Positions 13,138 to 50,777 of a DNA stretch of 50,777 bases are shown one piece after another. The notes beneath the pieces are model-generated. The model did no database searches. It saw only the letters and a program-made list of their open reading frames with translations, and was not told where the DNA came from. The stretch covers positions 1-50,777 of the forward strand of contig JAADVB010000132.1 of the NCBI GenBank assembly GCA_023334545.1. The letters are read 5' to 3'. This DNA is from Salisapilia sapeloensis CBS 127946 (Eukaryota; Protista; Oomycota). Every line of letters starts with the position of its first letter. The first letter of the stretch is position 1. The translations under genes and the position numbers were made by a program.

Positions 13138-14142
13138 CTACGCCACTCCATCCGATCCTAGATTATCCTGAATCCAGTAATAGATAGACCCGACCCGAGT
13201 AAAAACCACGGGTTTGTGTCCGCATTGCGTCGAATCTGCTTTTGCCATAATCCCGACGACTTTCTCTTTGTAGATGAGTGGTGCACCGGTGTCACCAACA
13301 CATAACGAACTTCCAGGATTCGATTTCAATAACTTTATGCGAACTGGTTTCGTGCGAGCTTCAGCACAGACCATGGTAGATGTAATCTGAAAGCCGTAGG
13401 ATTTCTGGCATTTCTCTCTAGTTATCAACGACAGTTCCGCTTTCTTTAGTTCTTTAGAAGGTGTCATCCCGATTCGGATCCACGTAGCCATCGATTCATA
13501 CGGATCTACTTGACCCCACCCGTAGGCTGTAGCTTTAGGCCTCAATAAAAGCGCAAATCGATTTACGGTACGATACTTTTTATCAAAGTTCGCAAAGTGC
13601 CGATACGCTTCCGACACGCGACGCGCGAGCACGAGGATCATAATGTCATATTCTTCACCATCAAAGTCAATGGGTGGAGGTATGATCTCATGAACTTTGA
13701 TTTGCTCGCCACTATCACGACCTTTGTTCTCTGCTGATCCAATCGAAACGTAGATCGGATCATTATCCGACGGTTCTGGAGACGTATCTGACAATGGTCT
13801 TGATAGTTTCCCTAGCATGTCGTTGCTACGCATATTCCTGCAACTCGCCGCTGTGAGCACGCGTGCTTCAGATATCAGGACGCCTCCACAATAGTTTAAT
13901 CCGTCTATGCTTGCTCGCAAACCGACCATGTAGGGAACATCTTTGGTCATATTAGCACTTTTGCCATTATAGATGCGATTTTCTCCTTCCACCGGTACGT
14001 CTTGGTTGGTTTCATCCACCACACGAATATCATGGAAACCTTTTAAGTGTCTTATACTTGCTCCATGAGCCACAATAGTCAGATTGGGAATAAACGTCAG
14101 GATAGCTACTGATACGGCACGTAGTATAGTTGTGCTTTTCAT
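13138..14142 (-). CDS. Secreted catalytically inactive trypsin-like protein (glucanase inhibitor protein, GIP-like)
   Basis: Signal peptide, IYNG mature start, CGGVLI, TAASC (catalytic His to Ser), YDIMIL and GDTGAPL (catalytic Ser to Thr). Loss of the catalytic triad is the defining feature of oomycete GIPs. Confidence 0.85.
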   Translation of the reverse strand: MKSTTILRAVSVAILTFIPNLTIVAHGASIRHLKGFHDIRVVDETNQDVPVEGENRIYNGKSANMTKDVPYMVGLRASIDGLNYCGGVLISEARVLTAASCRNMRSNDMLGKLSRPLSDTSPEPSDNDPIYVSIGSAENKGRDSGEQIKVHEIIPPPIDFDGEEYDIMILVLARRVSEAYRHFANFDKKYRTVNRFALLLRPKATAYGWGQVDPYESMATWIRIGMTPSKELKKAELSLITREKCQKSYGFQITSTMVCAEARTKPVRIKLLKSNPGSSLCVGDTGAPLIYKEKVVGIMAKADSTQCGHKPVVFTRVGSIYYWIQDNLGSDGVA

Positions 14143-15730: not shown

Positions 15731-15734
15731 TACA

Positions 15735-16095
15735 GTGCGAGTCGTGGATATCAACCAATTCTTCCTTCTACCACTGTACGATACCTGTTTCGAAATAATA
15801 ACGAAGCGCTCACTAGCGCAAGTAGAGCGAAAAACTCATCAAGTCGAGCGACTGTTTCGCGCGCTTTTTTAAATGTGCACATTTCGAGACCCAGGCATGC
15901 CTTGAAGTCTTCACGGAGATGATTTTCTTCTAATTCCATACAAGAAGAACGATCGGTTGCTTTTGTACTCCTAAATTGGCAGGAAATTTATACTGAAGTG
16001 ATCTGTTAAGTTTCCAATGGCAAGAGACAAACCACAATCGTATATTCTCAACGAATGAAGAGTTGTCCGATTCAGTTACCATTGATAAAATTACA
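15735..16095 (-). repeat. Dispersed repeat, copy 1 (inverted homolog of 46085-46435)
   Basis: For example, gaagacttcaaggcatgcctgggtctcgaaatgtgcacatttaaaaaagcgcgcgaaacagtcgctcgacttg (minus strand here) vs gaagactttaaggcacgcctggtcctcgaaatgtgcaaattgaaaaagcgcgcgaagcagtcgctcgacttg (plus strand, ~46270-46345). Similarity continues for about 350 bp. Confidence 0.85.
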
Positions 16096-16560
16096 AGAGG
16101 CTCATCCCTGATTATGTCGATTCAGTAATCAGCGCGAATACGGCCTTAGGAATTCGACAAGCTTTCTATGTCGATTCTCACCCGTACTGTTGGAAGGATC
16201 TCTAAATATCACACCAATCCTAGGTGCCTACTGTCCCATTTCCAGCGAGCTTTAATTTGTATTTGCATTCAGGAGGAAGTACGCCCCCAGCTGTGTTAGC
16301 AGAGCAATGTCCTTTTGCTTGTCAAGTTCCTATACGTGCAATGCTGAGACTTCGCTGCAATTAGCTAAGAAGGATGAGGACTGTAGATGAATGGCGATAC
16401 CTTACAGCAGAACCCAACGCAGAACCAGCGCTGGTATAAAATAGAAAAATGCATTTGTTGCACTTGTGTGCATGTGAAACTTGTGATGACAAAATGCAGT
16501 AGAGAAAGCAAGGTCTATCGACAGACTAGTCATGCTGTCACCATGCCAGAGTCAAGCAGC

Positions 16561-17719: not shown

Positions 17720-17825
17720 GCGCGCGCACAATCCTCCATCTGTCCTCAATTCAAACGAAAGTGGGACCCGCGCGCTCAATCGTCCATCTGTCCTCAATTC
17801 AAACGAAAGTGGGACCCGCGCGCAC
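17720..17825. repeat. Tandem direct repeat, 48-nt period, two copies
   Basis: An identical 41-mer tccatctgtcctcaattcaaacgaaagtgggacccgcgcgc occurs at 17735 and 17783, with a gcgcgc motif also preceding the first copy. Confidence 0.95.
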
Positions 17826-33309: not shown

Positions 33310-33807
33310 ATGGGTCCCCCTCCTCCGCCAGGCGAAGAAAAAGTTGTCATCCTGCGAACGGTCGGGGGTGAGGTCGCTCCGGCTTCGGCTCTCGCGCCTA
33401 AGGTCGGTCCGCTCGGTCTGTCGCCGAAGAAAATCGGTGACGACATCTGCAAGGCCACGGGCGACTGGAAGGGCTTGAACGTCACGGTCAAGCTTACCAT
33501 CGTCAACCGTCAGGCGACCGTCTCCGTCATCCCGTCTGCTTCCTCGCTCCTCGTTAAGGAGCTCAAGGAGCCGCCGCGTGACCGCAAGAAGGTGAAGAAC
33601 ATCAAGCACGACGGTAACCTGTCGCTTGACCAGGTCATCGGTGTCGCTCGCATCATGCGCGAACGATCCATGGCCCGATTCCTCTCCGGAACGGTTAAGG
33701 AGATCCTCGGCACGGCCAGCTCCCTAGGCTGCACCGTCGACGGTGAGACGCCGGCTGAGATTCAGCGTCGTATCACCGACGGAGAGCTCGAGATCCCGGA
33801 AGAATAA
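33310..33807 (+). CDS. RPL12: 60S ribosomal protein L12 (uL11)
   Basis: [58 protein letters not shown] and [18 protein letters not shown]. Confidence 0.97.
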
Positions 33808-33995
33808 GCTCAAGGCAAATCAAGTGGTCTTCCGCGCTGCGGACCGATCAAATTCCATTGTTTCTCGTTCATTTTCTTATCTAGTAGGATGCCTGTCGTG
33901 TATGCATGTACTAGGTGAAGGAGAGACGACGTCGTACACATACCAAAGAGAAGAGGAATGAATTAAAGAGTACGATTCAAAGGCACGTCTTCAGC

Positions 33996-35597
33996 CTACC
34001 CAAAGACGATGGACGATGGACCTCCGCCGTAGTTTCGGCTCATGCGCGAGCGAGAGCCTGGAGTCTTGGTCTGTTCGTTTTTCGACTCGGCGCTTCCCGC
34101 CAGACTAACCTTATCCGCATCGATCCCCTGGTTCTTCAGGTTGCTCTTGATCGCCTCCGTGTCGCTGCCCTTGATGTTTAAGTCATCCTTGACCTCCTCA
34201 ACTGTCTGTCTGCCGTCCTCATGCGTCACCAGCACTCGTCTACAAGTGGAGTTCTCGCTCCAGCCTTCGCCTCCGCTGATGTGCCACGCATTCCGGATGA
34301 TCAGCTCAAAGTAGTCGTCGTCGTCGATAGAGGCGCTGATGGTGGCGTAGTACCGGAGGAACTCCCCTGGATAAACCTTGCCATCCTTGTCTCCACCGTC
34401 GAAAGTGTCCAAAAAGTCTGCTAGAACGTCCTCCCGTCTCTTCTTTCCAGCCTTCACGTCCGGATGATTCATAGCAGAGTACTTTTGCTTGAGATCCTCG
34501 ACGTCCACCACCCCGTTCTTGTCTGCATCCAGTCGTTCGAATGCTATCAGAGCCATCTCCTTCCGACGCTCGTTCATCTCTCCTCGCAAAGCAACTAGAA
34601 ACTCGTCGTAGTCGATCTCGCCAGATCCATCGGCATCAATAAACCTGAATAAGTCTTCCACCGCCTACTCCCATGTCCTTGAGATTATTAATTGACTATT
34701 ATATTATAATGTAAAAAGTACCTTGGACGAGAGACCGAGATGATGCTCCTCGATGGCTTTGGAGAACTCGTCCAGGTCCAGTCGACGGTTCCCGTTGTCG
34801 TCGATGATGCGGAACTTGCGGCCGAACGTCGCGACGCTCCTTGCGCCATGTTCGTAAAGCGACTGGCGAACTACTTCCAGCGTCTCTTGGACGTCTGCAG
34901 GGGCGTTAATGATCTTCTCAGGTAGGACGTTGCTCAGCTTCACTGGCTGGTGACTCGATGCCGACTGCCAGTCGCTCAAGCCTCCGAGTCGGATCAGGTC
35001 CTCCAAGTGATCCGCTACGTCCTTACCGTATCCGCTCTTGGCCGTCTGGATGGCACTCGACGAGTCTTCCATCAGCACTTTGCGCACCACTGGCTTCAGT
35101 GTCTGCATGCTGATCTCCATCAGCGACTGCGTCAGACTAGACGCGACGGCCTGGAATACCACGTCATTCGGATCCAACACACCGACGCAGACGACAGCAT
35201 GGAATCCGTTTTCACTGGCGTTGCTCAGAAGCTTGTTAGCAGCATACGGCAGCAAGTCTACGGACGGAACGACGAAAGTCTCATGTGCGAACCCCTTGAG
35301 ATTCTTCAAACAGTTCTCCTCGATTTGGTCCACACAGTCTCCAGGCCCTCCTGCCTTTAAGATTCCGACGCGAAGCTTGGAGGCTGATACTACAGAAGTA
35401 GGTACAGCAGTCGCCACCTCAACCGATGGCTTGGCTACCGGATCTTGAGCTGGGATGGGTGGAGACGCAGGCGCTGGAGCTTGCTTAGGAGCTACTTGGT
35501 CATATCCGAAACTGACATTGGATCCGCCACCAGGGGGTGCCTGTACTCGAGTCGTAGGTCGCTTGAGCGAGAGATCGGAAGAAGTGAGCGTGGACAT
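33996..35597 (-). CDS. Fusion protein: PGG motif - lumazine synthase (RibH)-like domain - calcyphosin-like EF-hand domain - GGG motif; intron 34665-34721
   Basis: RVQAPPGGGSNVSFG. RibH-like VVPSVDLLPYAANKLL, HAVVCVGVL and FQAVASSLTQSLMEISMQTLKPVVRKVL. EF-hands DDNGNRRLDLDEF, DADGSGEIDYDEF, DADKNGVVDVED and DGGDKDGKVYPGEF. Calcyphosin motif YATISASIDDDDYFELIIRNAWH. A canonical 57-nt intron joins the two ORFs in frame. Confidence 0.88.
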
Positions 35598-36996
35598 CTT
35601 GGTCGAAGCAGCCAAATCCAGTTTGATCTCATCTCCTGCTCGTACTTAGTGGCGCCATATGGACACCTGGAATCATAACTGATACATTGGATAGAAACAT
35701 GGCAACTATTTGATCGAGTACGACGAGGTTTTCTGTAAGTATAACTCCTAGAACTTATTCATATTGCTGTCTATGGATATACTTGATCATTCCTTCCTAG
35801 GATCGCCATGTCCACAGCAGAAGTACAAGAGGTAGGATCTATTTCAGTCGACTTTCATATGTATACTAGACTCAGAGAGATAAGTGTCTTTTTGAAGCGA
35901 GCTGATTGCATTTACTATCGATTCTATAAAGAGCTTTCAATCGTCCTTTGTATCTCTCTCGCTACGGGTTTACGATGGGTACCTCTTGAAACGATAGCCA
36001 CTTATGAAAGGCATAGGAAATTGCATCGACTTGATCAGCGCTTTCATTCGGTGCTAGTACGCATCAAGCGTAGCTTGCTTTTCATCCACGATAGAAGGCA
36101 ACGGCATGCAACTGGACAGTCATTTCGACACCTCTTTGATCCAAGAGAGATACAACTTCCGTATCTCTCGTTTCGATTGCCGACGCACGGAATAAATCTG
36201 CAGCAAGTATCAACGGTTGAATAGAGTGAACTCTCCTTATTCCTCAGGCTCTTTCAGTCCAGCTCCTAATTCAACGGTCACATTTGGAGTGCAAGCACAA
36301 CCCACGTCCCAGACGGTTGGGACCTAATTCGAACAATCTACTAGCACTCACACATGCCAGTAGACCGTCCGGACTTTCGACAAGCCAAGTCACTGGAAGA
36401 ATCGACAACTAATACGAACACCAATAATGTAATCACGATCATCCTAAGTGTCATTTCATTTCTACTCACTCGATTCTTTCCAATCCTCTACCCTGCTCCG
36501 TTCTTATCCTAGTAAAGATGCAGGAGATGCACACGCTGACGCATTCGCCTCAAGCACGTGAACGCTTGGCCATGCTTCGAAGAACAAAGTCGATCTAGAA
36601 TCCCAGAACCAGAATCAATGCGGGTAGTTTATTAATAAATCCAGCATAGCACATCGTAATCTCCCAAGACGGACTCGTTTGCTTGTAGCTAAGAGCCATT
36701 CACAGCCTCTTAATGGAGAATCGATGAGTAGAACCCTCTCGACATGCTACGGAAAAGATCGATTCCAACGGAACTGAAGTCAGTAGCGAATTTCGAGCCT
36801 TCCTTCGTTCACGTACGAAAAGGTCTCGTCATGCATTCGGCGTCCGTTTCATCTTTTCGGTCGCGTGGAAATGAAAGGTCGCGAGGTCAAGGGCAGGAAA
36901 AGATTTGCAGCGACCCCTGCGTCCCAGATCTACAACTGCTAGCGAGCTCCCACATCGACGACAAAGAAGGTCGCATTTGGTATCTCTCAGCAGAAC

Positions 36997-38447
36997 ATGG
37001 AAGACGCGTTGCTTTCCAACGACATGTTTCAAAAGATGCTCAGTGACGACATGAACCACGGGTCCGTCCCAAAGCTAGATAAGCGCCGACAGTGGAGTAA
37101 GGCAGACGACCTAGTCATTCTCAAGTTCGTACGCGAGTATGGGACCAAGCGCTGGTCCAAGATCGCCGAGTTACTACCGGGAAGGACGCCCAAACAATGT
37201 CGGACGAGGTAACACATTTTATTCTGTGATACTTGACATCAAGTGCTCACGTGTCTCCTTCATCCTTTTAGATGGCTTAACTTTCTTGATCCGAGCATCG
37301 ACAAGGCGCCGTGGCGGCCGGAAGAGACGCAACTGATCTTTGCAGCGCAGAAGAAAATGGGGAACAAATGGGCGGAAATCGCCAAACTACTTCCTGGAAG
37401 GTGGCTACAGTCAGTTCATCAGCCCGATAAATTCTCTCTAACAAGCCTATGAACTGTAGGACGGATAATGCGATCAAAAATCACTGGTACTCGACCCATC
37501 GACGTCACTTGCGTCAGGCAGCCAAACACCGAGATAAGCCAGAGGCGAGCGGAAAAATGGGCGGCAGAAAGAGAGAAGGCGGAGCACTTCGGGAGTCTGG
37601 GATGAAGACCACCAAGCGACCTCGTAAGAAAAGCTCCGCTGACAGCCATGGAGATCAGAACCACACAGACGACTGCAGTGAAGAGAACTCGAATCCTGCA
37701 GCTGGCCACTCCACGTTCGAGATGGATTTATTTGCGGAGCATCTGTGTGGGTCGCTCACATCGCCCATTTCTGTCAGTTCTCTCGGATCACCTGTCAACG
37801 GAGGTACTCTTAACCTACTGTCCGGACGTCCAGACACGTTGACAGTACCACCTCTTGTCTCCAATCTGCATCCTCATTCGCAGCACCAGAATCCATCGAC
37901 AATAGGCCATCTCCCCACAGGATGGTACTCTCCGTGCGTCATCAATTCTACGCACCTGTCCACGTACTCTTTCTCGGACGCACTCTCTGCATCCGGCCTG
38001 CTAGATCAGAGCAGTCCTCACGATGGACCTAGTCTTCACAACGACCAGTCAGCTTGGAAGGACCTTGGACTGCGTTCGAACGACAAAGACATCGCGAGGC
38101 AAAGTGCGTCGTCTACGTCCCCAGTATCTGCTAAGGTTGAAGACGAGATCAAGAGCGATCAACCAACAACTCGTGAAAGCTCTAAAAAATTTGAAGAGAG
38201 TACTGAGAAAGGAAGAGGGAAGAGCACTAATAAATCTCGCGTCGCGGCCCTTAGACTCAGTGAGCCTCGAAGTCGGAGTAATTCCGCGGATCTCTTCCTC
38301 GACTGCGTACACATGCTCTCCTCGAAGAAGAGAGAAGTCAGCGACAGTGTTGCGAGCAGAAGTTGGCGTGCGAGGGTTCAGGAACAGGCACAAAAGAACA
38401 AGCTAGCGAAAGAGCTAACAAGACCACAGGCATCTGAGTCAGCGTGA
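36997..38447 (+). CDS. R2R3-Myb transcription factor; introns 37209-37271 and 37401-37459
   Basis: WSKADD..ILKFVREYGTKRWSKIAELLPGRTPKQCRTRWLNFLDP and WRPEE..[33 protein letters not shown] after splicing. Confidence 0.93.
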
Positions 38448-38499
38448 GACTAGTAATACAATACTACACAACATTTAAATAGGCAATCCTTCGCACTTG

Positions 38500-41400
38500 C
38501 GACTATTTTGAGGTGTTGCTATCTAGATTAGTTGTACTGACACAAAATGTTGCCTAAACTTTCAATATACAAGAAGATCACTGCAAGCTCTACCAAAGCT
38601 TAAACTCTGACGACTGCAAAAGCCTCCTACACAGCTCTCACATCGTAAAGTAGGCAATCAGAATCTCCAAAAACTAGCCTAACTCAGCGAATTTCAAATA
38701 AATAAATCTTATGAATATAAACTTCAACAACATGATTTTCTAAGTTTTTTTTGTTACAATGTAACTTTTTATAAAAGTACACCAGTCAAAACCTTTGCTC
38801 TAAGAACATAAAGCTACGTGACTATAGACGGTATCTTAAATTCAAACACTGATATAGTTACGCTATGAGAACATTAAACGTACGTTCGTAACTTTTTAAG
38901 TTGAAAATAAGGACTTCAAAAGATTCATACTCAAAACGTTTCTGATTCAAACCTACTACACTGTGTAGCAAGAACAACTAATACGTTATTAAAAGCACTT
39001 GTACATAGCAGACTCTAACATCGAAGGAGAAATTGAAAAAATGTAATTTCATTTACTTATATAAGCTAATAAGTGTAGGCTAATATTTATCAAAAGTTCT
39101 AAGAATAATGACTACTTCTATAAAAACAATACAGAAAGATTTAAACTTTGTACATGTAATCAACAAACTAAAATACAGCTTATTTATTAAATTTCAATAA
39201 ATTGATATAATAATCTACGTGTTAAACAAGTACTAAACAGTTTTTGATTCTTACATATTCGCTTCGTGTAGAACGTAATTATTCAAATTCTTATGACACA
39301 AACAAAATCTAAATCAAATTTGTACTAATGTATAAAATAAAAATAAATGTACATACTACAGTAAAAATACATATTTAAATATTTCTTTAAAAACTTTTTT
39401 GCTATATATGAGTGTGCAATTACAATGACTTTCCATACTATCTTGTTTGCGAAAATCAGCTAAATTTTTACTTATACATGATAGAAAAGTAAAAAAAAGA
39501 AGTTATAAGGCAAAAGGCTTATATTGTTTTTAGTTATATTGATATTATGTAATAAAAATCATAAAACCTTTAAAATTAGATTATAAATACCATACATAAG
39601 TCTTGTTTGTCAACATGTATTTAAACGTACAAGAAACAGTAAACTCTTAGTTAAAAAAAATTTACAAGTGTCAAAATTGTATTTAGCTTTGTACAATTTA
39701 TGTTGCAAAAATAATAAAATAAAATGTTAGAAAAATAACCAAAAATATTATAACACTGTTTATTATTTACCATTTTTTTTAGACTTTATATCAACATACA
39801 AAAATAAATTATTAATGTTAATGATCTTTTAATGAATAATTATTAATGTTAAAAAGCCACTGCACTCATAAAAATTTTTACAATGGACAAATACAGTTTA
39901 CTATCTTTATCTATTTTAAACTTGTGTCAAACAAAAGTTATGTTGTTTTTTAAAAAAAGCATGTTAGATAAGAACATTTGCGCATTTTAAATTTAGATAC
40001 CCAACAACACAGTCAACGAATACCAACTTAGAATAACACAAAGGTTGCTTTCTGTTTATAAGTTACGAATGCAAAGAAAGCTCAAATTTTACTTTAATTT
40101 CCTTGTATTATTTTATTATTATACCTATTTTTATATCAAAGTAGTTTCTTATCATACCATAGTCTTTTCAACTTTATAATATATATATATTTAAAGTTCA
40201 TCAACGTAGACAGGCGCACATTAGATAATTATAAATACTTATAATTTTTAATCTTTTTTGGTCATTAATAGAGTAAACGTAGGTGCCTAATTAAAGATTA
40301 TATTTTTATACCGTGCAGATAAAAAACAAATCTTATCAGTAAAAAACAAATCATAAAACTGGTTGACACAAACAAATTAGCTTACATTTCAATTAGAATT
40401 AAAAACGAACTCTGTTTATATTTGCTATGATAGTTGTGTTTAGCTTTTGAAAATAAATTGTTTAAGTAAACTATATAAAGCAATTAGACAAACACATAAA
40501 ATTTATTGTAAAGTAATATATTAGTTTTAGTAAAAACTAAATTAAGAAGGATTAACATCTTTATTGGAATTAAAACACGCAGTCTTTAATACACGTACAA
40601 ATAAACAACTAAAATATGATTTAGTATGCAGTTTGATTTTGAGACTAAATATTATAACGCGTATCTTTGTTTTGTTCCACTTTAAATATTATTTTGTTGA
40701 CAAAGTAATTACTGCAAATAACTTATGTAAGAATTGCTTTTTGAAACAAAATTCAGTCTATGCTGTTTTATAGAAATCATTATTTTAATTAAGTACTAAT
40801 AAAACGTTTAAATTATTTATTATTATAGCATAAAAAATTTTGTATACAAAATATACGTCATTTTTAGTTTAAATATTTTCCAATATACTTCTTTTGTTAT
40901 CCTTTGCGTTTACACGATTTCTATATTAACTTTGTACAACTTACCACTTTCATTTTAAAACCTTTTGTTTATTATACTTTTTTTTTAACAATGCTGAAGT
41001 TTTCTTTTATATTTTTGGACCGAATAAAGTATTTATGTAGGAATTATTTAAACTTAAAAGGGTTTATGTTTTAAATCACAATTTTGGTAATATGTCTTTA
41101 CTATTTAATTTTTTTGCGTTTTTTGCTTATAATACATTATACTGATTATGCTTATTTTGTACAGCACACTAGTGATATTATTGTTAACTTTAGCTACTTA
41201 ATTTAAAGACTAGTTGTATGTACAAACAAACAAAACATAAAAATTTTAACACTGTTTTGTTTTGTTAATGTACACTAATTTAAACTTACTGTTTCGATTA
41301 TTATAAGAATTAGGGTATGCTTTGACTTGTTTTTAATGAAAAAAATTGATATTTGATTTATACGCATGTTTTACATTTAAAACATTTTTCTTACATTTTA

Positions 41401-41800
41401 AACATACTACGGAATTTATAAACTGATGCTGTGTTCAATTTAATCTACTTGGTCATATAACAAAATCAAAAAAAATTTAAAACTTTGTTTACTTTGTAAT
41501 TAACTGTTTAATAATCTAATGTTGTTTTAGTTTGACGCAAATGATATTGAATAACATGTTTTCTGTATACTATGTGAAAAGCATCTATTCTATATTTTTA
41601 TTTCAATTCATAGCAGATAAACTTAATTAAGCTTATGTTAAAAATTTTGGAAAATCATGAAAAAAAGCATGTTGTAGCATTTGTACATCAATTTAATGAA
41701 AAGTATCAGTATGTAGTGCAATGTTTAAGCTTGGCGCAACAAAAAAAAATAATGCAAACAGCCGCAATTTAGACGTGCAACTTTCATGGACAATTTGAAA
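38500..41800. other. Extremely AT-rich, ORF-free island with TpC/GpA depletion (probable hypermutated sequence)
   Basis: Sampled 60-nt lines are about 15-28% GC against roughly 50-55% in genes. A hand count over nine lines gave about 23 TC+GA vs about 71 AC+GT. CA/TG are retained. Composition grades into both flanks. Confidence 0.85.
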
Positions 41801-43829
41801 GACCTAATCGACCTACCACTGTATAAATCGTTCGTATTGAATGGTAACAAAAGATCAGCTAGTACGTCTGTGGACGTTTGGCACGTTTTGGGACGGATAT
41901 AAAATATCCGAGGTTGGTTGACGTTATGTAAGAAGCTTTTAACTCGGTACTTTTTTTATATTGATGAAGAGTGGATGAAAAGTATAATTTAAGGGCAATC
42001 ATTTGTTGAAATTTGACTTTATGGTTAAGTATTGAGCTTATCAGTAGCCACAGCCTTGACTGCTTTTAACTCGTCCGAACATGAAGCTGACTCGTAAAAA
42101 GACACCTTGTCTTTATGCCCCTTCGATATGTGTAAGCTATCATCGTCTACAATGATGCATGCGTATATAAAACAACCAAAAGACACGGATTGTACATGTT
42201 GATAATTGTTACACGGTCAATTAGAATACGTTACGAATCTCTTCGAGATATGGTTTATAGAAAAGAGAAGAGCTGGCAGCTTTGAAACACAGGTAATATA
42301 AGAACTGCTCGAAGAGCTCTATGTATAGTCAAAGAGGACGAATTAAATCCTGAAATACGATCGCGAAATCACTCTTTGAAGGATATGCTGTAAGTAGGTT
42401 TCTAGTTTATTTTAATAGCTACTGTTTGACCCCGAGATACCAACAACCAATTTTGGCTGCCGCTATTTCACAATATCTAAGCTGAAGACAATATTCGTGG
42501 TAATGCCATCTGCATCTTCTTTTGTACATGTCCTTCTGACTCGTGACATAGTCTATAGACAGTCCCACCTTTGAGGCTTTATCCCATTTTCCCAAAGATA
42601 GGGCAAGATAGGCCACATTCATTACCTGAATTAGCATAAAATAGTTCTGACGATTGCTGAAGTATCATATCTGTCCTTTCAGTCATGCTGTGCCTATGAC
42701 ACGAAGGCAAAACATTATTCTATGTGCAAATAACGCACCGATATTCATCCCTTGATTAGTCGTTTCACAGTGAAACTTTGACACCTATCGAATGAAGTAA
42801 AAGATGCATTGCTATCGCTAGAAACAGCTACGACGGAAAGCTCTTACATCTGCTGTAGATTTATAGGTTGGTTGGCGCTACGTATTTTGTTCAGATTAGA
42901 TTCTCTCTTGGTATCACACTGGTTGTTCAACCGATTATAGAATGCCATGATCTTGAAAACATCAGTCGGAGCTCTCTCGAGTTCACTTGTTAGTAGGTAT
43001 CGAGTCTCAATTTCATTTCCCAACTTGAGTTCCACATCTAAGATTTGTTCATCACTAGATTTAATGTAATGTTTTAAAAATATGGGCAGGAAGCTATGAA
43101 AGTATAAGAAGGCAAGGGGTACACAAAATGCTCCAAAATGGTTCAAATAGATGGTGTTCAGAACTGTATGAACGAACAGAGCGAGGAATATGCATCACCA
43201 GCTTGATAGCGGTTCACCTCCGCAAGCAATGAAGTGATTGCCTTGATATTCTAAAATGGACCAGGTTCGAATACACCTACTGGCTGATATTTGACATCGT
43301 TTCGTCCCACTTTTCAGCTTGGAAAAGCGGAAACTGCTATCAGAGCATAGTGCTAGTCCAGAAGTATAGGTTTTTGACAGGTGGGCACCACCTTGTTACA
43401 ATTGAAAAGACAGGTATCTGGATATGCTAAATGTATTACTACAAAATGGTGCAGGTTTTCATATCGGTGATGGAGATGATAGTGACACTCCACTTCAGGA
43501 CGCAATCGAACAGTACCTTTTAAAATGAGGAGAATATTTGTCGAATGAGGAGCAGCTCCAACTGAGTACAACGACAAGCTTAAAAACGCGAGGACTATGC
43601 CGAGAAAAAACCTGATTGAAAGCGTTTTGAGTGTCCTTTGAACCATTAGCAAGACTTCCAAGAGCCATAGAATTCGAAAACCAAAAGACTGTGGACAGCC
43701 TCTTACGCCGATCAACCGTTTGAAAGGATATTGATAAAATGAAGCTTAGATACAAGAATTTTAAGGGGAAATGGCAAGGCAGAATGGGAGTAAAAGCGTC
43801 CACTCAGCCAAACCATCGGCAGCTACAAG

Positions 43830-44260
43830 TTTGGCGTAGTATGTTTTGCACTTTAGACAAAAGATGTCGATAAGCGGAATGGCATTATCAATTGGATTGA
43901 CGAAAAGAGCTGGATTCATAAAGAGAAATGTGAGAGTGGACCGTCATTGATCGTTATTACTTTCAGGGTAATCAATTAGATAACAACTCATGCTCTCCAG
44001 TGCGTTCAGATTGTGCAAATTTATAGCTCGTTGTCTCCTCAGATAGGTTTAAAATCGGTTAAATGGATAAGCTAACAAATGGAATACGATACAAATTCAG
44101 AGAAGTATGAAGCGCGAACACGGACACTGCGTCGAAAACCTTTCAAAAGCCAAGAGCTGTCGATAAACAAGAGGTATGCCTTCATATAACTGATGATCTT
44201 CTTATCAACATTTTTGCAAAAAGTTTGCTCCGCCATGGTATGGCTGTTAAACACTTCTAG
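43830..44260 (-). mobile_element. Heavily decayed non-LTR (LINE-like) reverse transcriptase remnant
   Basis: One minus frame reads SKLFAKMLIRR...ALGF*KVFDAVSVFALHTSLNLYRIP (cf. YKI.AK.LA.RL and LD..KAFD.V). A downstream frame reads DGPLS (cf. QGDPLSP). Many stops and frameshifts. Confidence 0.4.
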
Positions 44261-46084
44261 CCCCAACGAACAAATGCACTTAATCACGAATGCCTTTATA
44301 TGGTAGTGCGTCGCTGCTTTGTCCGCGAAAGGTATAACCGAATGCTATTGATCTATCTTTTAGTCGAACTGGGAAATCAAAAAGTTCTTTTAGCGAAAAT
44401 AAACTTAGCATATAGGCAGAAACAACTGCAGTGAGTAGAGAGGGCAAGGATCGGGGGTGTGGCATAATAGCTTCCATGCAATAGCTCAATGAGCGTCTCA
44501 CTGTTACTATATCAGCATCAAGCACACTCCAACACAGGTTCAGCGTCATGGTGAAAATTCTTCAAAAGCAAGCAAGCAAGAATAGGGGGATTAAGGGTTC
44601 ATTTCGCTATAACACTTCTATGTGCAATCCTCGCTCTCTTCGGTGGTGTTGCCGTTGAAGAACTGCTAAAAGCTGTGGTCTTTCCGAGTGCTCTGAGACT
44701 CATACCTGATATCATCACAGAAACTTCAAATAAATTTATGGAAGAGATGGTGACCTAAGAAGAAATGAAGCATGTGCGTGAAAGTGTAGGCTTCTCTTCT
44801 AAGCACTTATCCGCGTTGCAAGAAGCTAGCGTGAGGTTCAAGACTAAAAGTGAGTGCGTGCTTTCGATAAAGGATAGTCACAAAGCCGATAAGCGGACTG
44901 GTGATATCATCTCTTCCTTTTTATTGCAAGACCAAAAGTAACCCAGAGTCATGTACGAAGAAGGTCATGGGAACAACTATCGAAGTCAACACAATGATTT
45001 CGAAAAGGAAGATTCCTATAATGAGACACGTTTTCAGCAGTATCACGTTTCGGACTTCAACTGCAGAAAACCTACTGAGTTTCTGTATTTGGTGTCTGCT
45101 GCTTCATGCGGCGCCGGGTATAGTCAGTCGTCGTAACCAGTAAAATTCCTAATCAAAGCATATTCACGTATCTACATGACATTCGCGGCTCTGTTCACGG
45201 ACTATATGAATGTTTAGGCTTATTAAGTGGACACACAACAATGCTTTTTTCGTATAGTTGAAGCGACTGTTCGACAGTGAAGGTAGCGGGCGGATCTGTA
45301 TTATCAATCATTTATTAACTGTGTCATACTACGCATATGGTACCGTCTCATATTAAAATGACAATACAGAATATCTAGGAAGTTTGGCCATTGCTGTAAG
45401 CCCAGACGATCTTCAATGTGCCACTCTTAACTTCCACGGAAGGGCGGCTAGCAGTTAATTCACATTTTGAGCCCAGCAAACTATCTGTTACGTGTGACCA
45501 CGGCTATCGTCTACAACTGGCGAAATAATCTGATCTTTCAAAGTTGAGCTCCCCCTATTTAAACTCCGATAGTCTGTTGTGGGTATCAAAGTTGGCTTTA
45601 CTTTTAGTCCTAAATATATTCTATCATCTATACACTGTATCTAATCATCGACATGCCATGTAGAAGGTACGGCGCTTAATGTCACTTCATTGGAGTGCGA
45701 TAAACATACCTGAATCCAAAGATATACAAACAGCGGCCATTCTCACCTTTGGTCAAGTGTGCTTACTGCCCTCTACTATATTTATTTGAGAGATTTCAAC
45801 CTTTCAAACTATCAGCAGCCGAATTTTCGATATCAGTTACCTCCTAAGGTAGCTGGGTCGAATCATCGGGCACATAAGCTTAAAACTTGGAGGGTAAAGA
45901 GATCAGTAAATAAAGTAAAAGCTTATCTAACGATTTTCGGTAATCTTTAACGTTAATTTGAAGTATTATGACTCGATCGGAGGATGACAAGTAGTTGTGC
46001 AAAGGATCCTTGGATGTATTTTTTGTGAAATTCTTTACGCTGTGCTCGCGCTAAATACCAATTCCGCAAAAATTGGGATTCGAA

Positions 46085-46435
46085 TGTTGTTATTCTAGTC
46101 ATGATAATCGAATTGGGCAATTCCGTGTTCGCTGCGAATAGCCGATTTTGCTTTGCCAGTTGCCATTTATAACCTCACGTAACGCTTCAATAAAGATTTT
46201 CTGCCAAACGAGGAGTACATAAGCAAGTGTTCTTTCGTTTTTTAAGCAATCAGGAGGAAAACATCCTGGAGAAGACTTTAAGGCACGCCTGGTCCTCGAA
46301 ATGTGCAAATTGAAAAAGCGCGCGAAGCAGTCGCTCGACTTGGTGAGCTCTTCGCTTTTATTTCGGAACAGACAGAGTACTGTGGTGAACGAAATAATTG
46401 GGCGATATTTGCGACTCACACTGTACTCGTTCCAC
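46085..46435 (+). repeat. Dispersed repeat, copy 2 (inverted homolog of 15735-16095)
   Basis: Colinear nucleotide similarity over about 350 bp, with one internal deletion of ~20 nt relative to copy 1. Confidence 0.85.
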
Positions 46436-47135
46436 TGAAATGGCGAAGAGCTCAATGTTGCAAGTAAATCGGATGACACTTCAATCTGAATGGCTTTTGG
46501 CGATCTACCACGATCTACTCGACACTATTCCCGCTAAAGCGTGGCAGAGGACCGGACGATATACGTGGAGAGAACTATAAAGGTGGATAGCGACTTAAGA
46601 ATAAGAAGAACCGCCAAAGACTCAGACATCTAGTTCTTTTACTGTTTTTGCGTGTTTGTTTTCATAATGCCCAGTATTCCTTGCATGATACCCGGTTATC
46701 TGCTCAACGAACACGACTCTTTATCCACTATTTTTTGCTATCGTCGTATATGTTGACTCAAGTGCAAATAGTACATTCTTGAAAAGAAATTAGGCGTTCT
46801 CCGGCTACGTGCACAGCAAATATGATTTACGCGTGCACATTAGTGAGAGTTTGCTAGCGTTGGCACGCACGTGTTTAGCCTCCGGTGAGAGGACGCACAC
46901 GAAAGGTCAATCTGAGATGCAGGGGATTATCCATTGTCATATGCATTTCGAGAGGGGTGTATCTGTACCCTCAGTCGGTACAAAGTCAGCTCATGAAAAG
47001 CGAAATCGGAATCATTGCCTTCAGTTCGATAGCTAGAGTCAAGAGAGTTGCGCTCACAATTGATCGTGAATGTCGCGGGTGACGCCATGAGCTAGATAGC
47101 CGTCGAGGGGATCTTCAGCTCTACGAAGCTACGAT

Positions 47136-47369
47136 TTACACGTACATTATGGATGTCGTCCATTTGAGGACTTCAACAATAGGCAATCCAGGTCGAACTA
47201 CCTCCGTCAAATCCGCTCGTTTCAATGCATCTCTCTCAAGGCAAGACAAAGTAAATGTACAGACCTTGCTCTTCAGCTCTACTCTACGTTCTATATGTAT
47301 TGCAGGACGTCTGATAGGCATGGGAAGTAGTTCCGGTGGTAACTGATAAAATCGAATGTACCGTTTCAA
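47136..47369 (-). mobile_element. Decayed Ty3/Gypsy pol fragment (region at the start of RT)
   Basis: YQLPPELLP...FTLSCLERDALK...KWTTSIMYV resembles the Gypsy pattern LP..LPP.R...(F)RLS..E.DAL....SPW.S.+..V. Stops follow immediately. Confidence 0.4.
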
Positions 47370-47533
47370 TATCCGTTTCTATAGCACGTGCAGAGGTGGG
47401 TTTACCTAGCCAGTGTTTGTGTATGCATTGTGGTATTTCTACCCCTCCGCTGGTCTGAACTCAAAATCCAAAAGTGATTGCGCCGAGCACGCGTCCGTTG
47501 GCATCAAGTACCATCCGACACCGACCGAGCAAG

Positions 47534-48556
47534 ATGCTAGAGTCCCATAACTCAACCATGGACACACCCGTTAGGGACCATACCATCCAGGCCGAAGTCT
47601 CGACGACAGAAGACCATCCCAAGGACCTAGAGCTCAAGGCCTCATCTCACCGGATTGCGTACGGCGTAGCGGCCGCCATGGTCCTCATTACGCTCATTAG
47701 CATCCCAAGTAGAGCCACCGGGAAGGACGCTGCGTACGTGTGGTGGTGTGGGTGGCTCACAGCCGTCGCGACGGGTCTGGGCGCCCTCCCGTTCTACTTT
47801 CTCCAGTCCGTCGATAAGTTCTGGCTCGGCATCTGCAACGGTACAGCGTCTACATGCATAGAATAGACGCAGGAAGAGACTTATATTGTGACGATAGGAC
47901 TGGCGGCGGGTATGATGCTAGCAGCTACAGGATGCCTGTTCTACGAGGCGTGGACTCTTCCCCATCAGCTGGACTATGCCGTGAGCGTCAGCTATCGGCT
48001 AGGAGTCGGCGTCTTGCTCGGCATCCTCTTCATCAAGGTCACCAAGATCTTCCTGGAGGACTATGACGACGTCACTGTGGCTGGGCTCAAGGGACTGGAC
48101 GCACGCCGAGCGCTCTTGATCATGGCCGTCATGACGCTGCACAGCGTGTCGGAGGGCGTCGGCGTCGGCGTCTCGTTCGGAGGCGAAGGCGGCGTGCGTC
48201 GAGGTCTTATCGTGACGACGACCATGGCAGTGCACAACATCCCGGAAGGTGTCGCCATCAGCCTCGCTCTCGTGCCGCGTGGCCTGAGCGTCTTCCTCGC
48301 CAGCCTCTGGTGCATCCTGTCCAGCCTCCCGCAGCCGATCTTTGCCGTCCCAGCCTTTATGTTCGTGGAGCAGTGGCTACCGATCCTCCCCGCCGGACTA
48401 GGATTCGCCGGTGGCGCAATGGCACATGTGGCTGTCCAGGAGCTGCTGCCCGAGTCTCTCGAGGACACCAAGTCTCTCCCGACGACGATTTCGGCCACTG
48501 CGCTGGCGTTTGTGGTGTTCCTGACGCTCCAACTGGTGCTCAGTGGAGGTCTGTAG
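47534..48556 (+). CDS. ZIP family metal transporter (ZupT/GufA/ZIP11-like); intron 47841-47897
   Basis: ATGLGALPF, LAAGMML, MTLHSVSEGVGVGVSFG, MAVHNIPEGVAISL, SSLPQP and GFAGGAM..V...ELLPE, with multiple transmembrane helices. Confidence 0.92.
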
Positions 48557-48732: not shown

Positions 48733-50777
48733 ATGGACGACAGGACGGAGCACAGTCTCCTGCACTGGGTTCGTCCTTCGCCTAGTCTTTTCACCCATGC
48801 CTAGGTAGATGTTGACGTTGCTTGCTGCTGTATGACTAGGTGCAGAGCTTCCGGGAGGAGCTGGAGCCGAATGGACGCCTCGAGAGCTTGCGTGATTTAA
48901 GAGACGGCGTCTTCCTCGCCAAGTTACTGCACCGCATGTGAGTTTGCATTGCAAGTCGAGATACCATTCTACCGGATACTACTGTCATGCACACAGAGAA
49001 CCAGAGTACATGCCGATGGACCAGATCCAGCAAGACGTTGGGGACAGTTGGGCGCTCGGGAGTCGGAATTTACAAGCGCTCTTGCGGTCGCTCGACCTGT
49101 ACTTTCAAGAAGAGCTCAGTCAGAACGTTGATTGGGATGCAGAGATAGACGTGTCTCGCATCGCCCAGCACGGGGACGTGGAGCAGATTGGAAAAGTGGT
49201 GGAGCTCTTGCTCGGTGCCGCCGTCCAGTGCCCGGACAAGTCGGACTACATCCACGCCATCATGCAGCTAGACTCGGAAGAGCAGGCGTGTCTAATGCAC
49301 TTAATCGAAGACATGATGCAGCGTCTGAGCAGCTCTTCTCCGACGCGCGACCGAGAGACGAGTGTGGATCGAGTGCGAGGGTCCTTCGCCTACTTTGCCC
49401 AGCACGAAGGCCAGTCGTCCCCCTCCTCTTCTCTGGAGCAGCAGCTGAAGGAGGCACTAGATAAGGCTTCCGAGATGGAGCTTAAGCGCATGGACGCCGA
49501 GACAGACCGGAGAGAGGCGATGGCGCAGCTGGAGAGATCTCGAGACGAGACGCGAGCGCTGAGGGACGAGAACAGGGCGCTACGAGAGGAGCGAGACAAG
49601 CTGCGTGCTGAGCGACAGAGTACTCTTACCAAGGACAACAAGAAGATTACGCAGATCGTGGAAGGCGAGACGCACTTGTTGACGCAGCAGGTGGAGGAGA
49701 AGGAGCAGGAGCTGCATCGGACGAAGAAGGAGCTGGGGGAGCGTCTGGAGACGCTGGAGAACGAAGTCCGTCGGCAGAACGACGAGCTGGACATTGCCAG
49801 GTCGAAGCTGACGCAGTTACCGAAGCTGGAGGCGACGGTGGACAAGTACAAGCGTCGGCTGGAGGAGATGCAGTCGCTTCGAAACCAAGTGAAGGACTTG
49901 GAGAGCCACAATGCGCAGTACCTGGACAAGGTGCTGGACTTGGAGAGCACTGTCAAGAGCATCCCTTCCCTCAAGTCTCTCGTCGAGAGGTACAAGAACC
50001 AGGTGGTGGATCTCGAGACGGACAACGTCGAGGCGGAGTCGACGCTTCGAATTCGAGAAGACAAGATCGGGAGGCTGCAGGAAGAGCTGGACAGTGCGTT
50101 GGCTGCGAAGGACTTTCTAGAGTCCGAGGTGGAGGAGCTTCGGTCGCAAGTGGCCAACTTCCGATCAGATGGGCTGGACGACGAACAGAACTTGGAGCTG
50201 GTGCTCGGCTCGGACTCGACGAGCAAGCTCAAGGAGCAGCTGGCGAGGCTGGAGAGGGAGAACACAGAGCTGCGGTCTGGGGAGGAGAACGCAGAGCTGA
50301 CGCACGTGCGGAACGAGCTGGATGATGCGCTCCGGCAGAAGGAGGCGCTGCAGACGTCTCTCCAGCAGTCTAGACAAGAGTGCGCTCAGCTGAGGGAGGA
50401 AGTTGAACACCTGGCTAGGAAGATGGAGGAGCGTAGTCAGGAACAAGTGCCAGCTCCTGAAGCCAAAGCTCCTGAAGCTAGAGCTGAACCGGAAGCGACT
50501 GCTGCGGACATTCTGGCTCAAGCAGAGCCAAAGCCTGAGGTTGAGCCAAAGCCTGAGGTTGAGCCAAAGCCTGAGGTAGACTCGACGGCCCCTTCACCTC
50601 CTGTGGAGCTTACTCCACCGCAAGAAGAACCGAAGGAAGAGGAGAAGGTAGAAGAGCTACAACGGGAAGTCCCGAAAACCGAAGTACAAAAAAAGGAAGA
50701 GCCGAAGGAAGCGAAGGAGGAAGCGAAGGAGGAAGTGAAGGAGGAAGTGAAGGAAGCGAAGGCGGAAGTGAAGGAGG
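48733..50777 (+). CDS. HOOK family dynein adaptor (CH-like N-domain plus long coiled coil), 3' end beyond window; introns 48769-48839 and 48938-48996
   Basis: Spliced N-terminus LLHWVQSF...LRDGVFLAKLLHRIEPEY...DVGDSWALGSRNL...ELLLGAAVQCPDKSDYIHAIMQLD, then YKRRLEE and a heptad coiled coil. Absent from the ORF track because the window ends before a stop codon. Confidence 0.9.
50525..50578 (+). repeat. Three 18-nt units (gagccaaagcctgaggtt) encoding EPKPEV in HOOK; 12-nt KEEA/KEEV repeats follow near 50705-50777
   Basis: Directly visible tandem units. Confidence 0.9.

What the first reader, a model, noticed from the sequence alone, without database searches (positions are those of the whole stretch)
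38500..41800. AT-rich island with a TpC-specific depletion signature: candidate RIP-like hypermutation system in an oomycete
Seen: GC falls to ~15-28% with long A and T runs and no real ORFs. Hand counts in nine 60-nt lines gave ~23 TC+GA vs ~71 AC+GT (e.g. line 41221: 0 vs 12; line 41161: 2 vs 10). In genes TC/GA are at least as common as AC/GT (line 61: 13 vs 8). CA/TG and ACG/CGT contexts survive. Known: fungal RIP mainly mutates CpA, methyl-CpG decay removes CG, and APOBEC-type deaminases target TpC. Phytophthora is reported to lack substantial 5mC. Inference: both strands have undergone massive C-to-T change at TpC (perhaps YpC), targeted to a repeat-rich compartment. This would be a genome-defence mutator (a deaminase, or a TpC methyltransferase followed by deamination) that I am not aware of having been described in oomycetes.
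Basis: partly seen in the sequence, partly recalled or inferred. Interest (0 to 1): 0.85.

Follow-up and report, generated by a model that had tools for sequence, protein, structure and literature searches.

The report
Short AT-rich island, centromere-like, in oomycete
A 3-kb, gene-free, very AT-rich stretch inserted into an otherwise conserved oomycete gene block really does lack C after pyrimidines, but the bias is mild (about 2-fold) and the stretch looks more like a small diatom-style centromere or similar chromatin domain than the product of a repeat-hunting mutator.

Summary
From 38,651 to 41,750 GC is about 23%. TC/GA has an odds ratio of 0.68-0.70 (z -7.1) and CC/GG 0.58. AC/GT (1.28) and GC (1.55) are in excess, and CpA and CpG are not depleted. 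All 47 other 1-kb windows have TC/GA of at least 0.95.

Simulated C>T/G>A decay of host-like DNA fits all ten dinucleotide ratios within sampling noise, but only with a 2-2.5-fold preference for pyrimidine-C. Strict TpC or YpC rules, APOBEC-strength bias, fungal RIP and CpG decay all fail.

Nothing links the island to repeats. It is single-copy, with no TE domain, no codon periodicity and no terminal repeats. A real dispersed repeat in the window is not hypermutated (55 transitions, 49 transversions, GC 41-43%).

The island lies in about 9 kb of lineage-specific non-coding DNA. This DNA splits the RPL12-DMRL/EF-hand-Zip block, which is contiguous in Lagenidium, Peronospora, Phytophthora and Albugo. 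RNA contigs stop at its edge, and AT skew switches at about 40.6 kb.

Unchecked notes from this scan report many similar 2.3-3.6 kb islands on other pieces of the same genome.

Best reading (0.4): a short AT-rich regional centromere-like domain shaped by local GC-to-AT pressure.

The parts
38651..41750 (.). AT-rich island (GC about 23%). The uninterrupted core with every 100-bp window <=32% GC is 39,001-41,750. It is depleted in YpC/RpG and enriched in ApC/GpT and GpC.
40560..40670 (.). AT-skew polarity switch at about 40,614. To the left A 812 : T 683. To the right A 391 : T 489.
   Evidence: permutation p<0.001 for AT skew; GC skew not significant
38448..38650 (+). Left transition zone, probably the 3' UTR of the Myb gene. 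GC falls from 0.40 to 0.32. RNA contigs end at 38,486.
41751..47470 (.). Gene-free 'desert' right of the island (GC 0.37-0.43). It lacks the YpC signature (GA/TC 1.01-1.11), has no Pfam domains, and has no RNA contigs as far as 43.5 kb.
46023..46425 (-). Copy of a non-coding dispersed repeat. Its partner lies at 15,731-16,160 (72-76% identity). Ts 55 : Tv 49, so it is not hypermutated.
36997..38447 (+). R2R3 Myb gene (two exons) abutting the island. Its orthologue lies on the other side of RPL12 in Lagenidium and Nothophytophthora, so it is relocated here.
33996..35615 (-). DMRL-synthase/EF-hand gene, the left anchor of the conserved block.
33310..33807 (+). RPL12 (uL11) gene, used as the synteny anchor.
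47474..48556 (+). ZIP zinc-transporter gene, the right anchor. In five other genera it lies less than about 1 kb from the DMRL gene(s).

Best explanation
The island is a discrete 3.1-kb, single-copy, ORF-free and apparently untranscribed AT-rich domain. It lies in about 9 kb of lineage-specific non-coding DNA that interrupts the ancestral RPL12-DMRL/EF-hand-Zip gene block.

I read it as one member of a genome-wide class of short AT-rich islands. These are most likely short regional centromeres of the diatom, Plasmodium or yeast 'GC-poor trough' kind, possibly with a fixed replication origin inside.

Its composition is what host-like DNA becomes after losing about half of its G+C through C>T/G>A transitions that hit C after a pyrimidine only about 2-2.5 times more often than C after a purine. 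One possible cause is a domain with little recombination or GC-biased repair. Another is DNA that is often single-stranded, where an ordinary context-biased deamination spectrum can run far towards AT. In both cases flanking genes and ordinary non-coding DNA are held at 40-55% GC.

Shown: the anatomy, the signature, its restriction to the island, the derived-insertion status, and the sufficiency of the mild-bias transition model.

Inferred: that the process was mutational, why it is confined to this domain, and the centromere function.
For: - Signature and domain limits.
- Model fit: a YpC preference of 2-2.5 gives rmsd 0.072-0.109, about equal to sampling noise.
- The island meets the published sequence criterion for diatom centromeres, which is at least ten 100-bp windows <=32% GC in 3 kb, non-repetitive and small (10.1101/096016). 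It has 60 such windows.
- Unique sequence: no internal or tandem repeats, and a 28.5-kb short-read contig crosses it with no differences.
- No ORFs, protein domains or RNA families. RNA contigs stop at 38,486.
- AT skew switches polarity inside the island (p<0.001), as expected around a fixed origin.
- The site is a rearrangement point in a block that is contiguous in Lagenidium, two Peronospora species, P. sojae and Albugo.
- Unchecked notes of this scan list many 2.3-3.6 kb AT islands on other pieces, with the same YC depletion and mid-island skew flips.
Against: - There is no direct centromere evidence. No CENP-A data or Hi-C are available, and the number of islands per chromosome is unknown. 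About 179 notes mention 'island', which could mean 30-45 islands. That is many for an oomycete karyotype.
- Known oomycete centromeres are 115 to >270 kb, have genome-like GC and are rich in Copia-like elements (PMC7082073; PMC11139960).
- The syntenic site is not centromeric in five other genera.
- If the mild YpC bias were simply the genome's neutral spectrum, the adjacent 5.6-kb desert should show part of it. It does not (GA/TC 1.01-1.11). An island-specific process or selection is therefore still needed.
- The model fit shows sufficiency, not necessity.
- The GC skew is not significant.
Confidence: 0.4

Rival explanations
1. A dedicated genome-defence mutator recognised an inserted repeat or TE and hypermutated it on both strands. 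The mutator would be an AID/APOBEC-like deaminase, or a cytosine methyltransferase followed by deamination.
For: - A transition model with YpC bias fits the composition.
- The signature is confined to the island and absent from neighbouring non-coding DNA.
- The island lies in derived, inserted DNA.
- Classical RIP indices are nominally positive only here.
- Unchecked notes mention deaminase-domain genes and TE fossils in other islands of this genome.
Against: - The bias is only 2-2.5-fold, and a preference of 6-fold or more is rejected.
- No repeat partner, TE domain, terminal repeats or relic codon periodicity were found.
- The genuine dispersed repeat in the window has Ts:Tv of about 1.1 and normal GC.
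- The adjoining 5.6 kb of inserted DNA is untouched.
- The reported uniform size of about 3 kb does not match TE size diversity.
- SsdA-type deaminases are context-independent (PMC12494967).
- A literature search found no RIP-like system in oomycetes.
Confidence: 0.15
2. A non-centromeric functional or neutral domain. It could be a fixed replication origin or a scaffold-attachment-type AT island. It could also be a recombination-cold, repair-poor spot that drifted to the mutational AT equilibrium without kinetochore function.
For: - The AT-skew switch inside the island.
- The island is untranscribed and gene-free.
- The mild-bias decay model fits.
- There may be more islands than chromosomes.
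Against: - Origins are normally far more frequent and smaller than one 3-kb island per several hundred kb.
- It is unclear what would give a purely neutral cold spot boundaries sharper than about 300 bp and a constant size.
Confidence: 0.2
3. Natively AT-rich inserted DNA. It would be an old non-coding mobile element family of about 3 kb, or a fragment of foreign DNA (mitochondrial, giant-virus or polinton-like). Its composition, size and internal skew pattern would be inherited rather than acquired in place.
For: - It is an insertion relative to five other genera.
- A uniform size, a shared signature and shared skew flips across islands (unchecked notes) would follow trivially from common descent.
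- One other island was noted to carry a viral-like fossil (unchecked).
Against: - No tRNA, rRNA or other RNA family was found.
- No protein domain was found in any stop-free piece.
- There is no period-3 signal and there are no terminal repeats.
- The short-read contig crosses the island unbroken, so it is unique at the 31-mer level.
- The composition is reproduced from host DNA with one free parameter.
Confidence: 0.15
4. An assembly chimera or contaminant.
For: None was found.
Against: - A 28.5-kb contig from a short-read run covers 37,600-43,500 with no differences. It may come from the same sample as the assembly, so it is not fully independent.
- Genes on both sides are orthologous neighbours in other oomycetes.
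Confidence: 0.02

Closest known systems
Short low-GC regional centromeres of the diatom Phaeodactylum tricornutum (Diner et al. 2017; 10.1101/096016), and the similar 2-4 kb AT-rich centromeres of Plasmodium and Cyanidioschyzon
   Same: A few kb long, non-repetitive, with no conserved motif. Defined by a cluster of 100-bp windows <=32% GC inside an otherwise ~48% GC, gene-dense stramenopile genome. This island has 60 such windows.
   Different: This island is much more AT-rich (23%, against an average of about 39% over diatom ChIP peaks). CENP-A binding, one-per-chromosome distribution and episome maintenance are untested here. I know of no report of a YpC-depletion signature for diatom centromeres. 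I did not test this.
Phytophthora sojae-type oomycete centromeres (PMC7082073; PMC11139960)
   Same: Same organismal group, poorly transcribed, and associated with rearrangement points.
   Different: Those are 115 to >270 kb, have genome-like GC (52-58%) and are full of a Copia-like transposon. Here there is 3.1 kb at 23% GC with no transposon domains.
Fungal repeat-induced point mutation and its AT-rich isochores (for example Leptosphaeria maculans, PMC3105345)
   Same: AT-rich, gene-free compartment. The composition is compatible with transition decay. The classical RIP indices are nominally positive.
   Different: - CpA/TpG is not depleted (odds ratio 1.18), and a CpA model fails (rmsd 0.65-0.70).
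- No repeat is involved.
- The repeats present in the window are not mutated.
- The domain is 3 kb, not tens of kb.
APOBEC3-type (TpC/CpC) and UV-type dipyrimidine C>T signatures
   Same: The same direction of context preference (C after a pyrimidine), acting on both strands. The polarity switch is compatible with damage to the lagging-strand template.
   Different: The strength here is about 2-2.5-fold, and values of 6-fold or more are rejected. No clustered strand-coordinated runs could be shown, and no enzyme is identified.
GC-poor troughs at yeast centromeres, and A+T-rich island replication origins of fission yeast
   Same: A local AT-rich trough of a few kb with skew switches, attributed to an origin or to lack of recombination.
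   Different: A different kingdom. The fission-yeast islands are 0.5-1 kb and far more numerous.

Membership tests
Fungal RIP | The mutated DNA is, or was, a duplicated sequence | tested here: inconclusive
   The island has no second copy in the 50.8-kb window, no internal duplication, and is unique at the 31-mer level in a short-read contig. An ancient, fully diverged partner elsewhere in the genome cannot be excluded.
Fungal RIP | Repeats in the genome are hit by transition hypermutation | tested here: not met
   The dispersed repeat at 15,731-16,160 and 46,023-46,425 has Ts 55: Tv 49, and both copies are at GC 41-43%.
Fungal RIP | CpA>TpA preference (CpA/TpG depleted) | tested here: not met
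   The CA/TG odds ratio is 1.18. A CpA model gives rmsd 0.65-0.70. The RIP indices are positive only because of the ApC/GpT excess.
Fungal RIP | RID/Dim-2-type cytosine methyltransferase present | not testable with these tools
   Only this window of the genome is readable.
AID/APOBEC-type (or UV-type) hypermutation | Strong 5'-T or 5'-C preference (several-fold to more than 10-fold) | tested here: not met
   The best fit is 2-2.5-fold. Preferences of 6 and 10 give rmsd 0.33-0.51, and strict rules give 0.47-0.86.
AID/APOBEC-type (or UV-type) hypermutation | Strand-coordinated mutation | tested here: inconclusive
   AT skew switches at about 40,614 (p<0.001). However, YpC and RpG are both depleted in both halves, and GC skew is not significant.
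AID/APOBEC-type (or UV-type) hypermutation | A DNA cytosine deaminase encoded and expressed | not testable with these tools
   There are only unchecked notes of deaminase-like genes on other pieces. SsdA itself is context-independent (PMC12494967).
5-methyl-CpG decay | CpG depletion | tested here: not met
   The CG odds ratio is 0.90-0.95, ACG/CGT is 1.40 times expectation, and a CpG model gives rmsd 0.37-0.40.
Short AT-rich regional centromere (diatom/Plasmodium type) | Cluster of at least ten 100-bp windows <=32% GC within 3 kb | tested here: met
   There are 60 such windows in 38,651-41,750 and only 6 elsewhere in the window. The criterion comes from 10.1101/096016.
Short AT-rich regional centromere (diatom/Plasmodium type) | Non-repetitive, gene-free, poorly transcribed | tested here: met
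   No repeats. No ORFs, domains or RNA families. RNA contigs of three runs stop at 38,486, but contigs show presence, not absence.
Short AT-rich regional centromere (diatom/Plasmodium type) | Exactly one per chromosome | not testable with these tools
   Other pieces of the genome cannot be read. Unchecked notes suggest many islands.
Short AT-rich regional centromere (diatom/Plasmodium type) | CENP-A occupancy or the ability to maintain an episome | not testable with these tools
   This needs an experiment.
Phytophthora-type transposon-rich centromere | 100-300 kb, genome-like GC, clustered Copia-like elements | tested here: not met
   The island is 3.1 kb at GC 23%, and there are no RT, integrase or gag domains in the island or its flank. 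The criteria come from PMC7082073.
Organellar (NUMT) or viral insertion | Recognisable organellar or viral genes, tRNA or rRNA, or coding periodicity | tested here: not met
   0 tRNAs, 0 Rfam families at gathering score and none credible at E<=1. There are no Pfam hits and no period-3 signal.

The most novel reading that the evidence does not exclude
An island-restricted cytosine-deamination regime, enzymatic or coupled to a chromatin or replication state, with a pyrimidine-C preference builds and maintains about 3-kb AT islands in this oomycete lineage. These islands would serve as point-like regional centromeres and would replace the 100-300 kb transposon-rich centromeres of Phytophthora. 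That would be both a hypermutation process and a centromere type not described in oomycetes.
Probability: 0.15. Interest if true: 0.85.

Novelty: new variant of a known kind. Interest (0 to 1): 0.6.

Why it matters
The only mapped oomycete centromeres are very large, transposon-rich and of ordinary GC content. Suppose this lineage instead uses diatom-like 3-kb AT islands. Centromere architecture would then have switched within the oomycetes. The islands would also be ready-made candidates for stable episomes in a group with poor genetic tools.

Whatever the function, the island carries a clean context signature confined to one domain (YpC lost, RpC kept, CpA and CpG untouched). This makes local mutational regimes in oomycetes directly testable with resequencing.

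There is also a practical warning. The standard RIP indices call this island 'RIP-positive' for the wrong reason.

Tried and rejected
- **Internal duplication:** two short repeat pairs about 1,495 nt apart hinted at one. A diagonal scan found no elevated identity.
- **TE, mitochondrial or viral relics:** the 10 longest stop-free pieces of the island and 19 pieces of the flanks were searched against Pfam. There were only chance-level hits (DUF900, CLAG, Cas_TM1802). The 'integrase ghost' at 41,614-41,769 is not supported. An Atlas look-up of the 141-residue flank piece found nothing recognisable.
- **RNA genes:** none at gathering score or at E<=1.
- **Relic codon periodicity:** none in purine/pyrimidine coding. 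Power is low, because real genes here range from 0.1 to 26.
- **Purine/pyrimidine k-mer structure as a test of a transition-only origin:** uninformative, because all non-coding regions are near random.
- **Terminal inverted or direct repeats at the island or insert edges:** none.
- **AA/TT helical periodicity:** none.
- **A/T-only runs:** no more frequent than composition predicts. Homopolymers are mildly enriched (19 against 12).
- **Bacterial promoter and terminator scan:** at the shuffle expectation.
- **Same locus in a sister strain, through the exact RPL12 protein:** not on record. No close relative exists in the protein collection (best GH47 identity 61%), so no between-species alignment of the island was possible.
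- **SsdA-like deaminase lead:** SsdA has no strong context preference (PMC12494967), so it would not predict this signature.
- **Conserved centromere position:** rejected. The block is gene-dense and contiguous in five other genera.
Full report
**Organism and setting**

The window is 50,777 nt, 48% GC and gene-dense. A GH47 mannosidase encoded at 20.5 kb is 54-61% identical to its orthologues in Lagenidium, Pythium, Globisporangium, Phytophthora, Peronospora and Albugo, and 50-55% identical to saprolegnian ones. No closer relative exists among 5.8 billion proteins. The genome is therefore an oomycete of the peronosporomycete side, but not Phytophthora and not any sampled genus.

**The observation**

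GC drops to 0.22-0.27 in the three 1-kb windows from 39 to 42 kb, against 0.39-0.58 elsewhere. Sixty of the 66 100-bp windows with GC <=32% lie between 38,651 and 41,750. The uninterrupted core is 39,001-41,750.

Counts for 38,700-41,780 against mononucleotide shuffles:

| Dinucleotides | Observed | Expected | z |
|---|---|---|---|
| TC+GA | 187 | 275.7 +/- 12.5 | -7.1 |
| AC+GT | 354 | 276.0 | +6.3 |
| CC+GG | 49 | 84.2 | -4.3 |
| GC | 65 | 41.9 | +4.1 |

- Symmetrised odds ratios are GA/TC 0.68, CC/GG 0.58, AC/GT 1.28, GC 1.55, CA/TG 1.19, CG 0.95, AA/TT 1.14 and AT 0.79.
- The three island windows have GA/TC 0.66-0.72. All 47 other windows have at least 0.95, including the 40%-GC non-coding DNA next door at 1.01-1.11.
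- Both strands and both halves are affected.
- A first-order Markov model explains nearly all trinucleotides, so the signal is a dinucleotide one.
It is a YpC depletion, not a TpC-specific one. The full-count ratio is also less extreme (0.53) than the hand-picked lines (0.32).

**Is a mutational reading quantitatively tenable?**

I took real sequence from this window and applied random C>T/G>A changes under different context rules until GC reached 23.4%. The starting sequences were genes at 53% GC, the 41% GC desert, and the 44% GC zone at 12-20 kb.

| Rule | rmsd over the ten odds ratios |
|---|---|
| Context-free | 0.23-0.26 |
| CpG | 0.37-0.40 |
| Fungal CpA RIP | 0.65-0.70 |
| TpC only | 0.47-0.59 |
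| YpC only | 0.71-0.86 (GA/TC goes to 0-0.2, GC to 3.6-4.1) |
| YpC preferred 2-2.5-fold | 0.072-0.119 |

The last figure equals the sampling noise of a 3-kb sequence, which is 0.076. Preferences of 6 and 10 give 0.33-0.51.

However, the bias is mild, within the range of ordinary context effects and far from an APOBEC- or UV-strength specificity. Sufficiency is not proof, because no ancestral or sister sequence is available.

**Is it repeat-directed?**

- The island has no internal duplication, no tandem repeats and no second copy in the window.
- None of its stop-free pieces hits a protein family, and neither do 19 pieces of the flanks.
- It has no period-3 signal in purine/pyrimidine coding, which transitions would preserve.
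- It has no terminal repeats.
- The window does hold one real dispersed repeat, at 15,731-16,160 and 46,023-46,425 (72-76% identical). Its copies differ by 55 transitions and 49 transversions and are both at 41-43% GC. Repeats here are not RIP-like targets.
- The 'transposon graveyard' and 'integrase ghost' noted beside the island found no support.
- The classical RIP indices are nominally positive only in the island (1.15, 0.92, composite +0.22). This comes from the ApC/GpT excess and the ApT deficit, not from CpA loss.

**Is it foreign or an artefact?**

- No tRNA, no Rfam family and no organellar or viral domain were found.
- A 28.5-kb contig assembled from a public short-read run of the same organism covers 37,600-43,500 without a single difference. 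It may be the source sample, so it is not fully independent. It does show that the island is unique at the 31-mer level.
- RNA contigs from three runs cover the Myb gene up to 38,486 and nothing beyond, as far as 43,500. Contigs show presence, not absence.

**Context**

- RPL12(+), DMRL-synthase/EF-hand(-), Zip(+) and AFG1 are immediate neighbours in Lagenidium, two Peronospora species, P. sojae and Albugo candida, with spacers under about 1 kb. They are not neighbours in Aphanomyces. Orthology was confirmed by tblastn.
- In the window, the DMRL and Zip genes are separated by three things: a Myb gene that sits on the other side of RPL12 in Lagenidium and Nothophytophthora, the 3.1-kb island, and 5.6 kb of anonymous 37-43% GC DNA. 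AFG1 no longer follows Zip.
- The island therefore lies in derived, inserted DNA at a local rearrangement point. The site is not centromeric in the relatives.

**Polarity**

AT skew switches at about 40,614. To the left A:T is 812:683, and to the right it is 391:489 (permutation p<0.001). GC skew is not significant. The direction is the one expected if the lagging-strand template on each side of a central origin had suffered more C>T. The YpC depletion itself is on both strands.

**Interpretation**

Unchecked notes from this scan report many other islands of 2.3-3.6 kb on other pieces of the same genome. Independent first readers noted the same YC depletion and mid-island skew flips. So this finding has been made before in this scan, on other DNA of this genome.

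A constant size, unique sequence, sharp edges, no genes and no transcripts fit a functional chromatin domain better than decayed transposons. The closest known kind is the short, non-repetitive, low-GC centromere of diatoms (10.1101/096016), with Plasmodium and Cyanidioschyzon as further examples. This island passes its sequence criterion sixfold.

That would contrast with the 115 to >270 kb, normal-GC, Copia-rich centromeres of P. sojae and its relatives (PMC7082073; PMC11139960).

I put 0.4 on 'short regional centromere-like domain shaped by local, mildly YpC-biased GC>AT pressure'.

- The main weakness is that nothing here tests kinetochore function or one-per-chromosome distribution.
- The absence of any partial signature in the adjacent desert means the process or constraint is truly island-specific. 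This keeps a domain-targeted deamination process alive as the novel case (0.15).

**Literature**

Searches found no description of RIP-like mutation or of short AT-rich centromeres in oomycetes. SsdA-type deaminases, noted on another piece of this genome, deaminate without strong context dependence (PMC12494967).

Noticed in passing
window 39000-42528: The palindrome TGTACA occurs 9 times in the island, plus twice just to its right. A first-order Markov model of the island predicts 1.8, and there are 11 copies in the other 47 kb. The excess is marginal after multiple testing. It could be a motif shared by the islands.
   Followed up: partly
window 15731-16160 and 46023-46425: An inverted pair of a ~430-nt non-coding dispersed repeat (72-76% identity) links the two lower-GC, gene-poor zones of the window. 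It has no ORF and no recognisable family.
   Followed up: partly
window 38700-41780: The classical RIP indices (TpA/ApT 1.15; (CpA+TpG)/(ApC+GpT) 0.92) flag the island as RIP-positive although CpA is not depleted. Automated RIP scanners would mis-call such islands.
   Followed up: yes
window 33310-48556; loci L001, L003, L006, L008: The RPL12-DMRL/EF-hand-Zip-AFG1 microsynteny is conserved from Albugo to Phytophthora but broken here. Myb is relocated, AFG1 is lost from the neighbourhood, and Peronospora and P. sojae carry an extra small DMRL paralogue that is absent here.
   Followed up: partly
window 3289-3456: Six tandem 21-nt coding repeats (a Pro/Glu/Ala/Thr-rich heptapeptide) lie inside the eIF4G-like MIF4G/MA3 gene (2787-6245).
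   Followed up: no
window 50621-50777: A 12-nt-period Glu/Lys-rich coding repeat runs off the right end of the window. It belongs to the gene that follows Zip where AFG1 is expected.
   Followed up: no
window 17721-17816: A 48-nt tandem duplication (96% identity) lies in the 42-46% GC zone at 12-20 kb. That zone also holds a trypsin-family gene (13138-14142).
   Followed up: no
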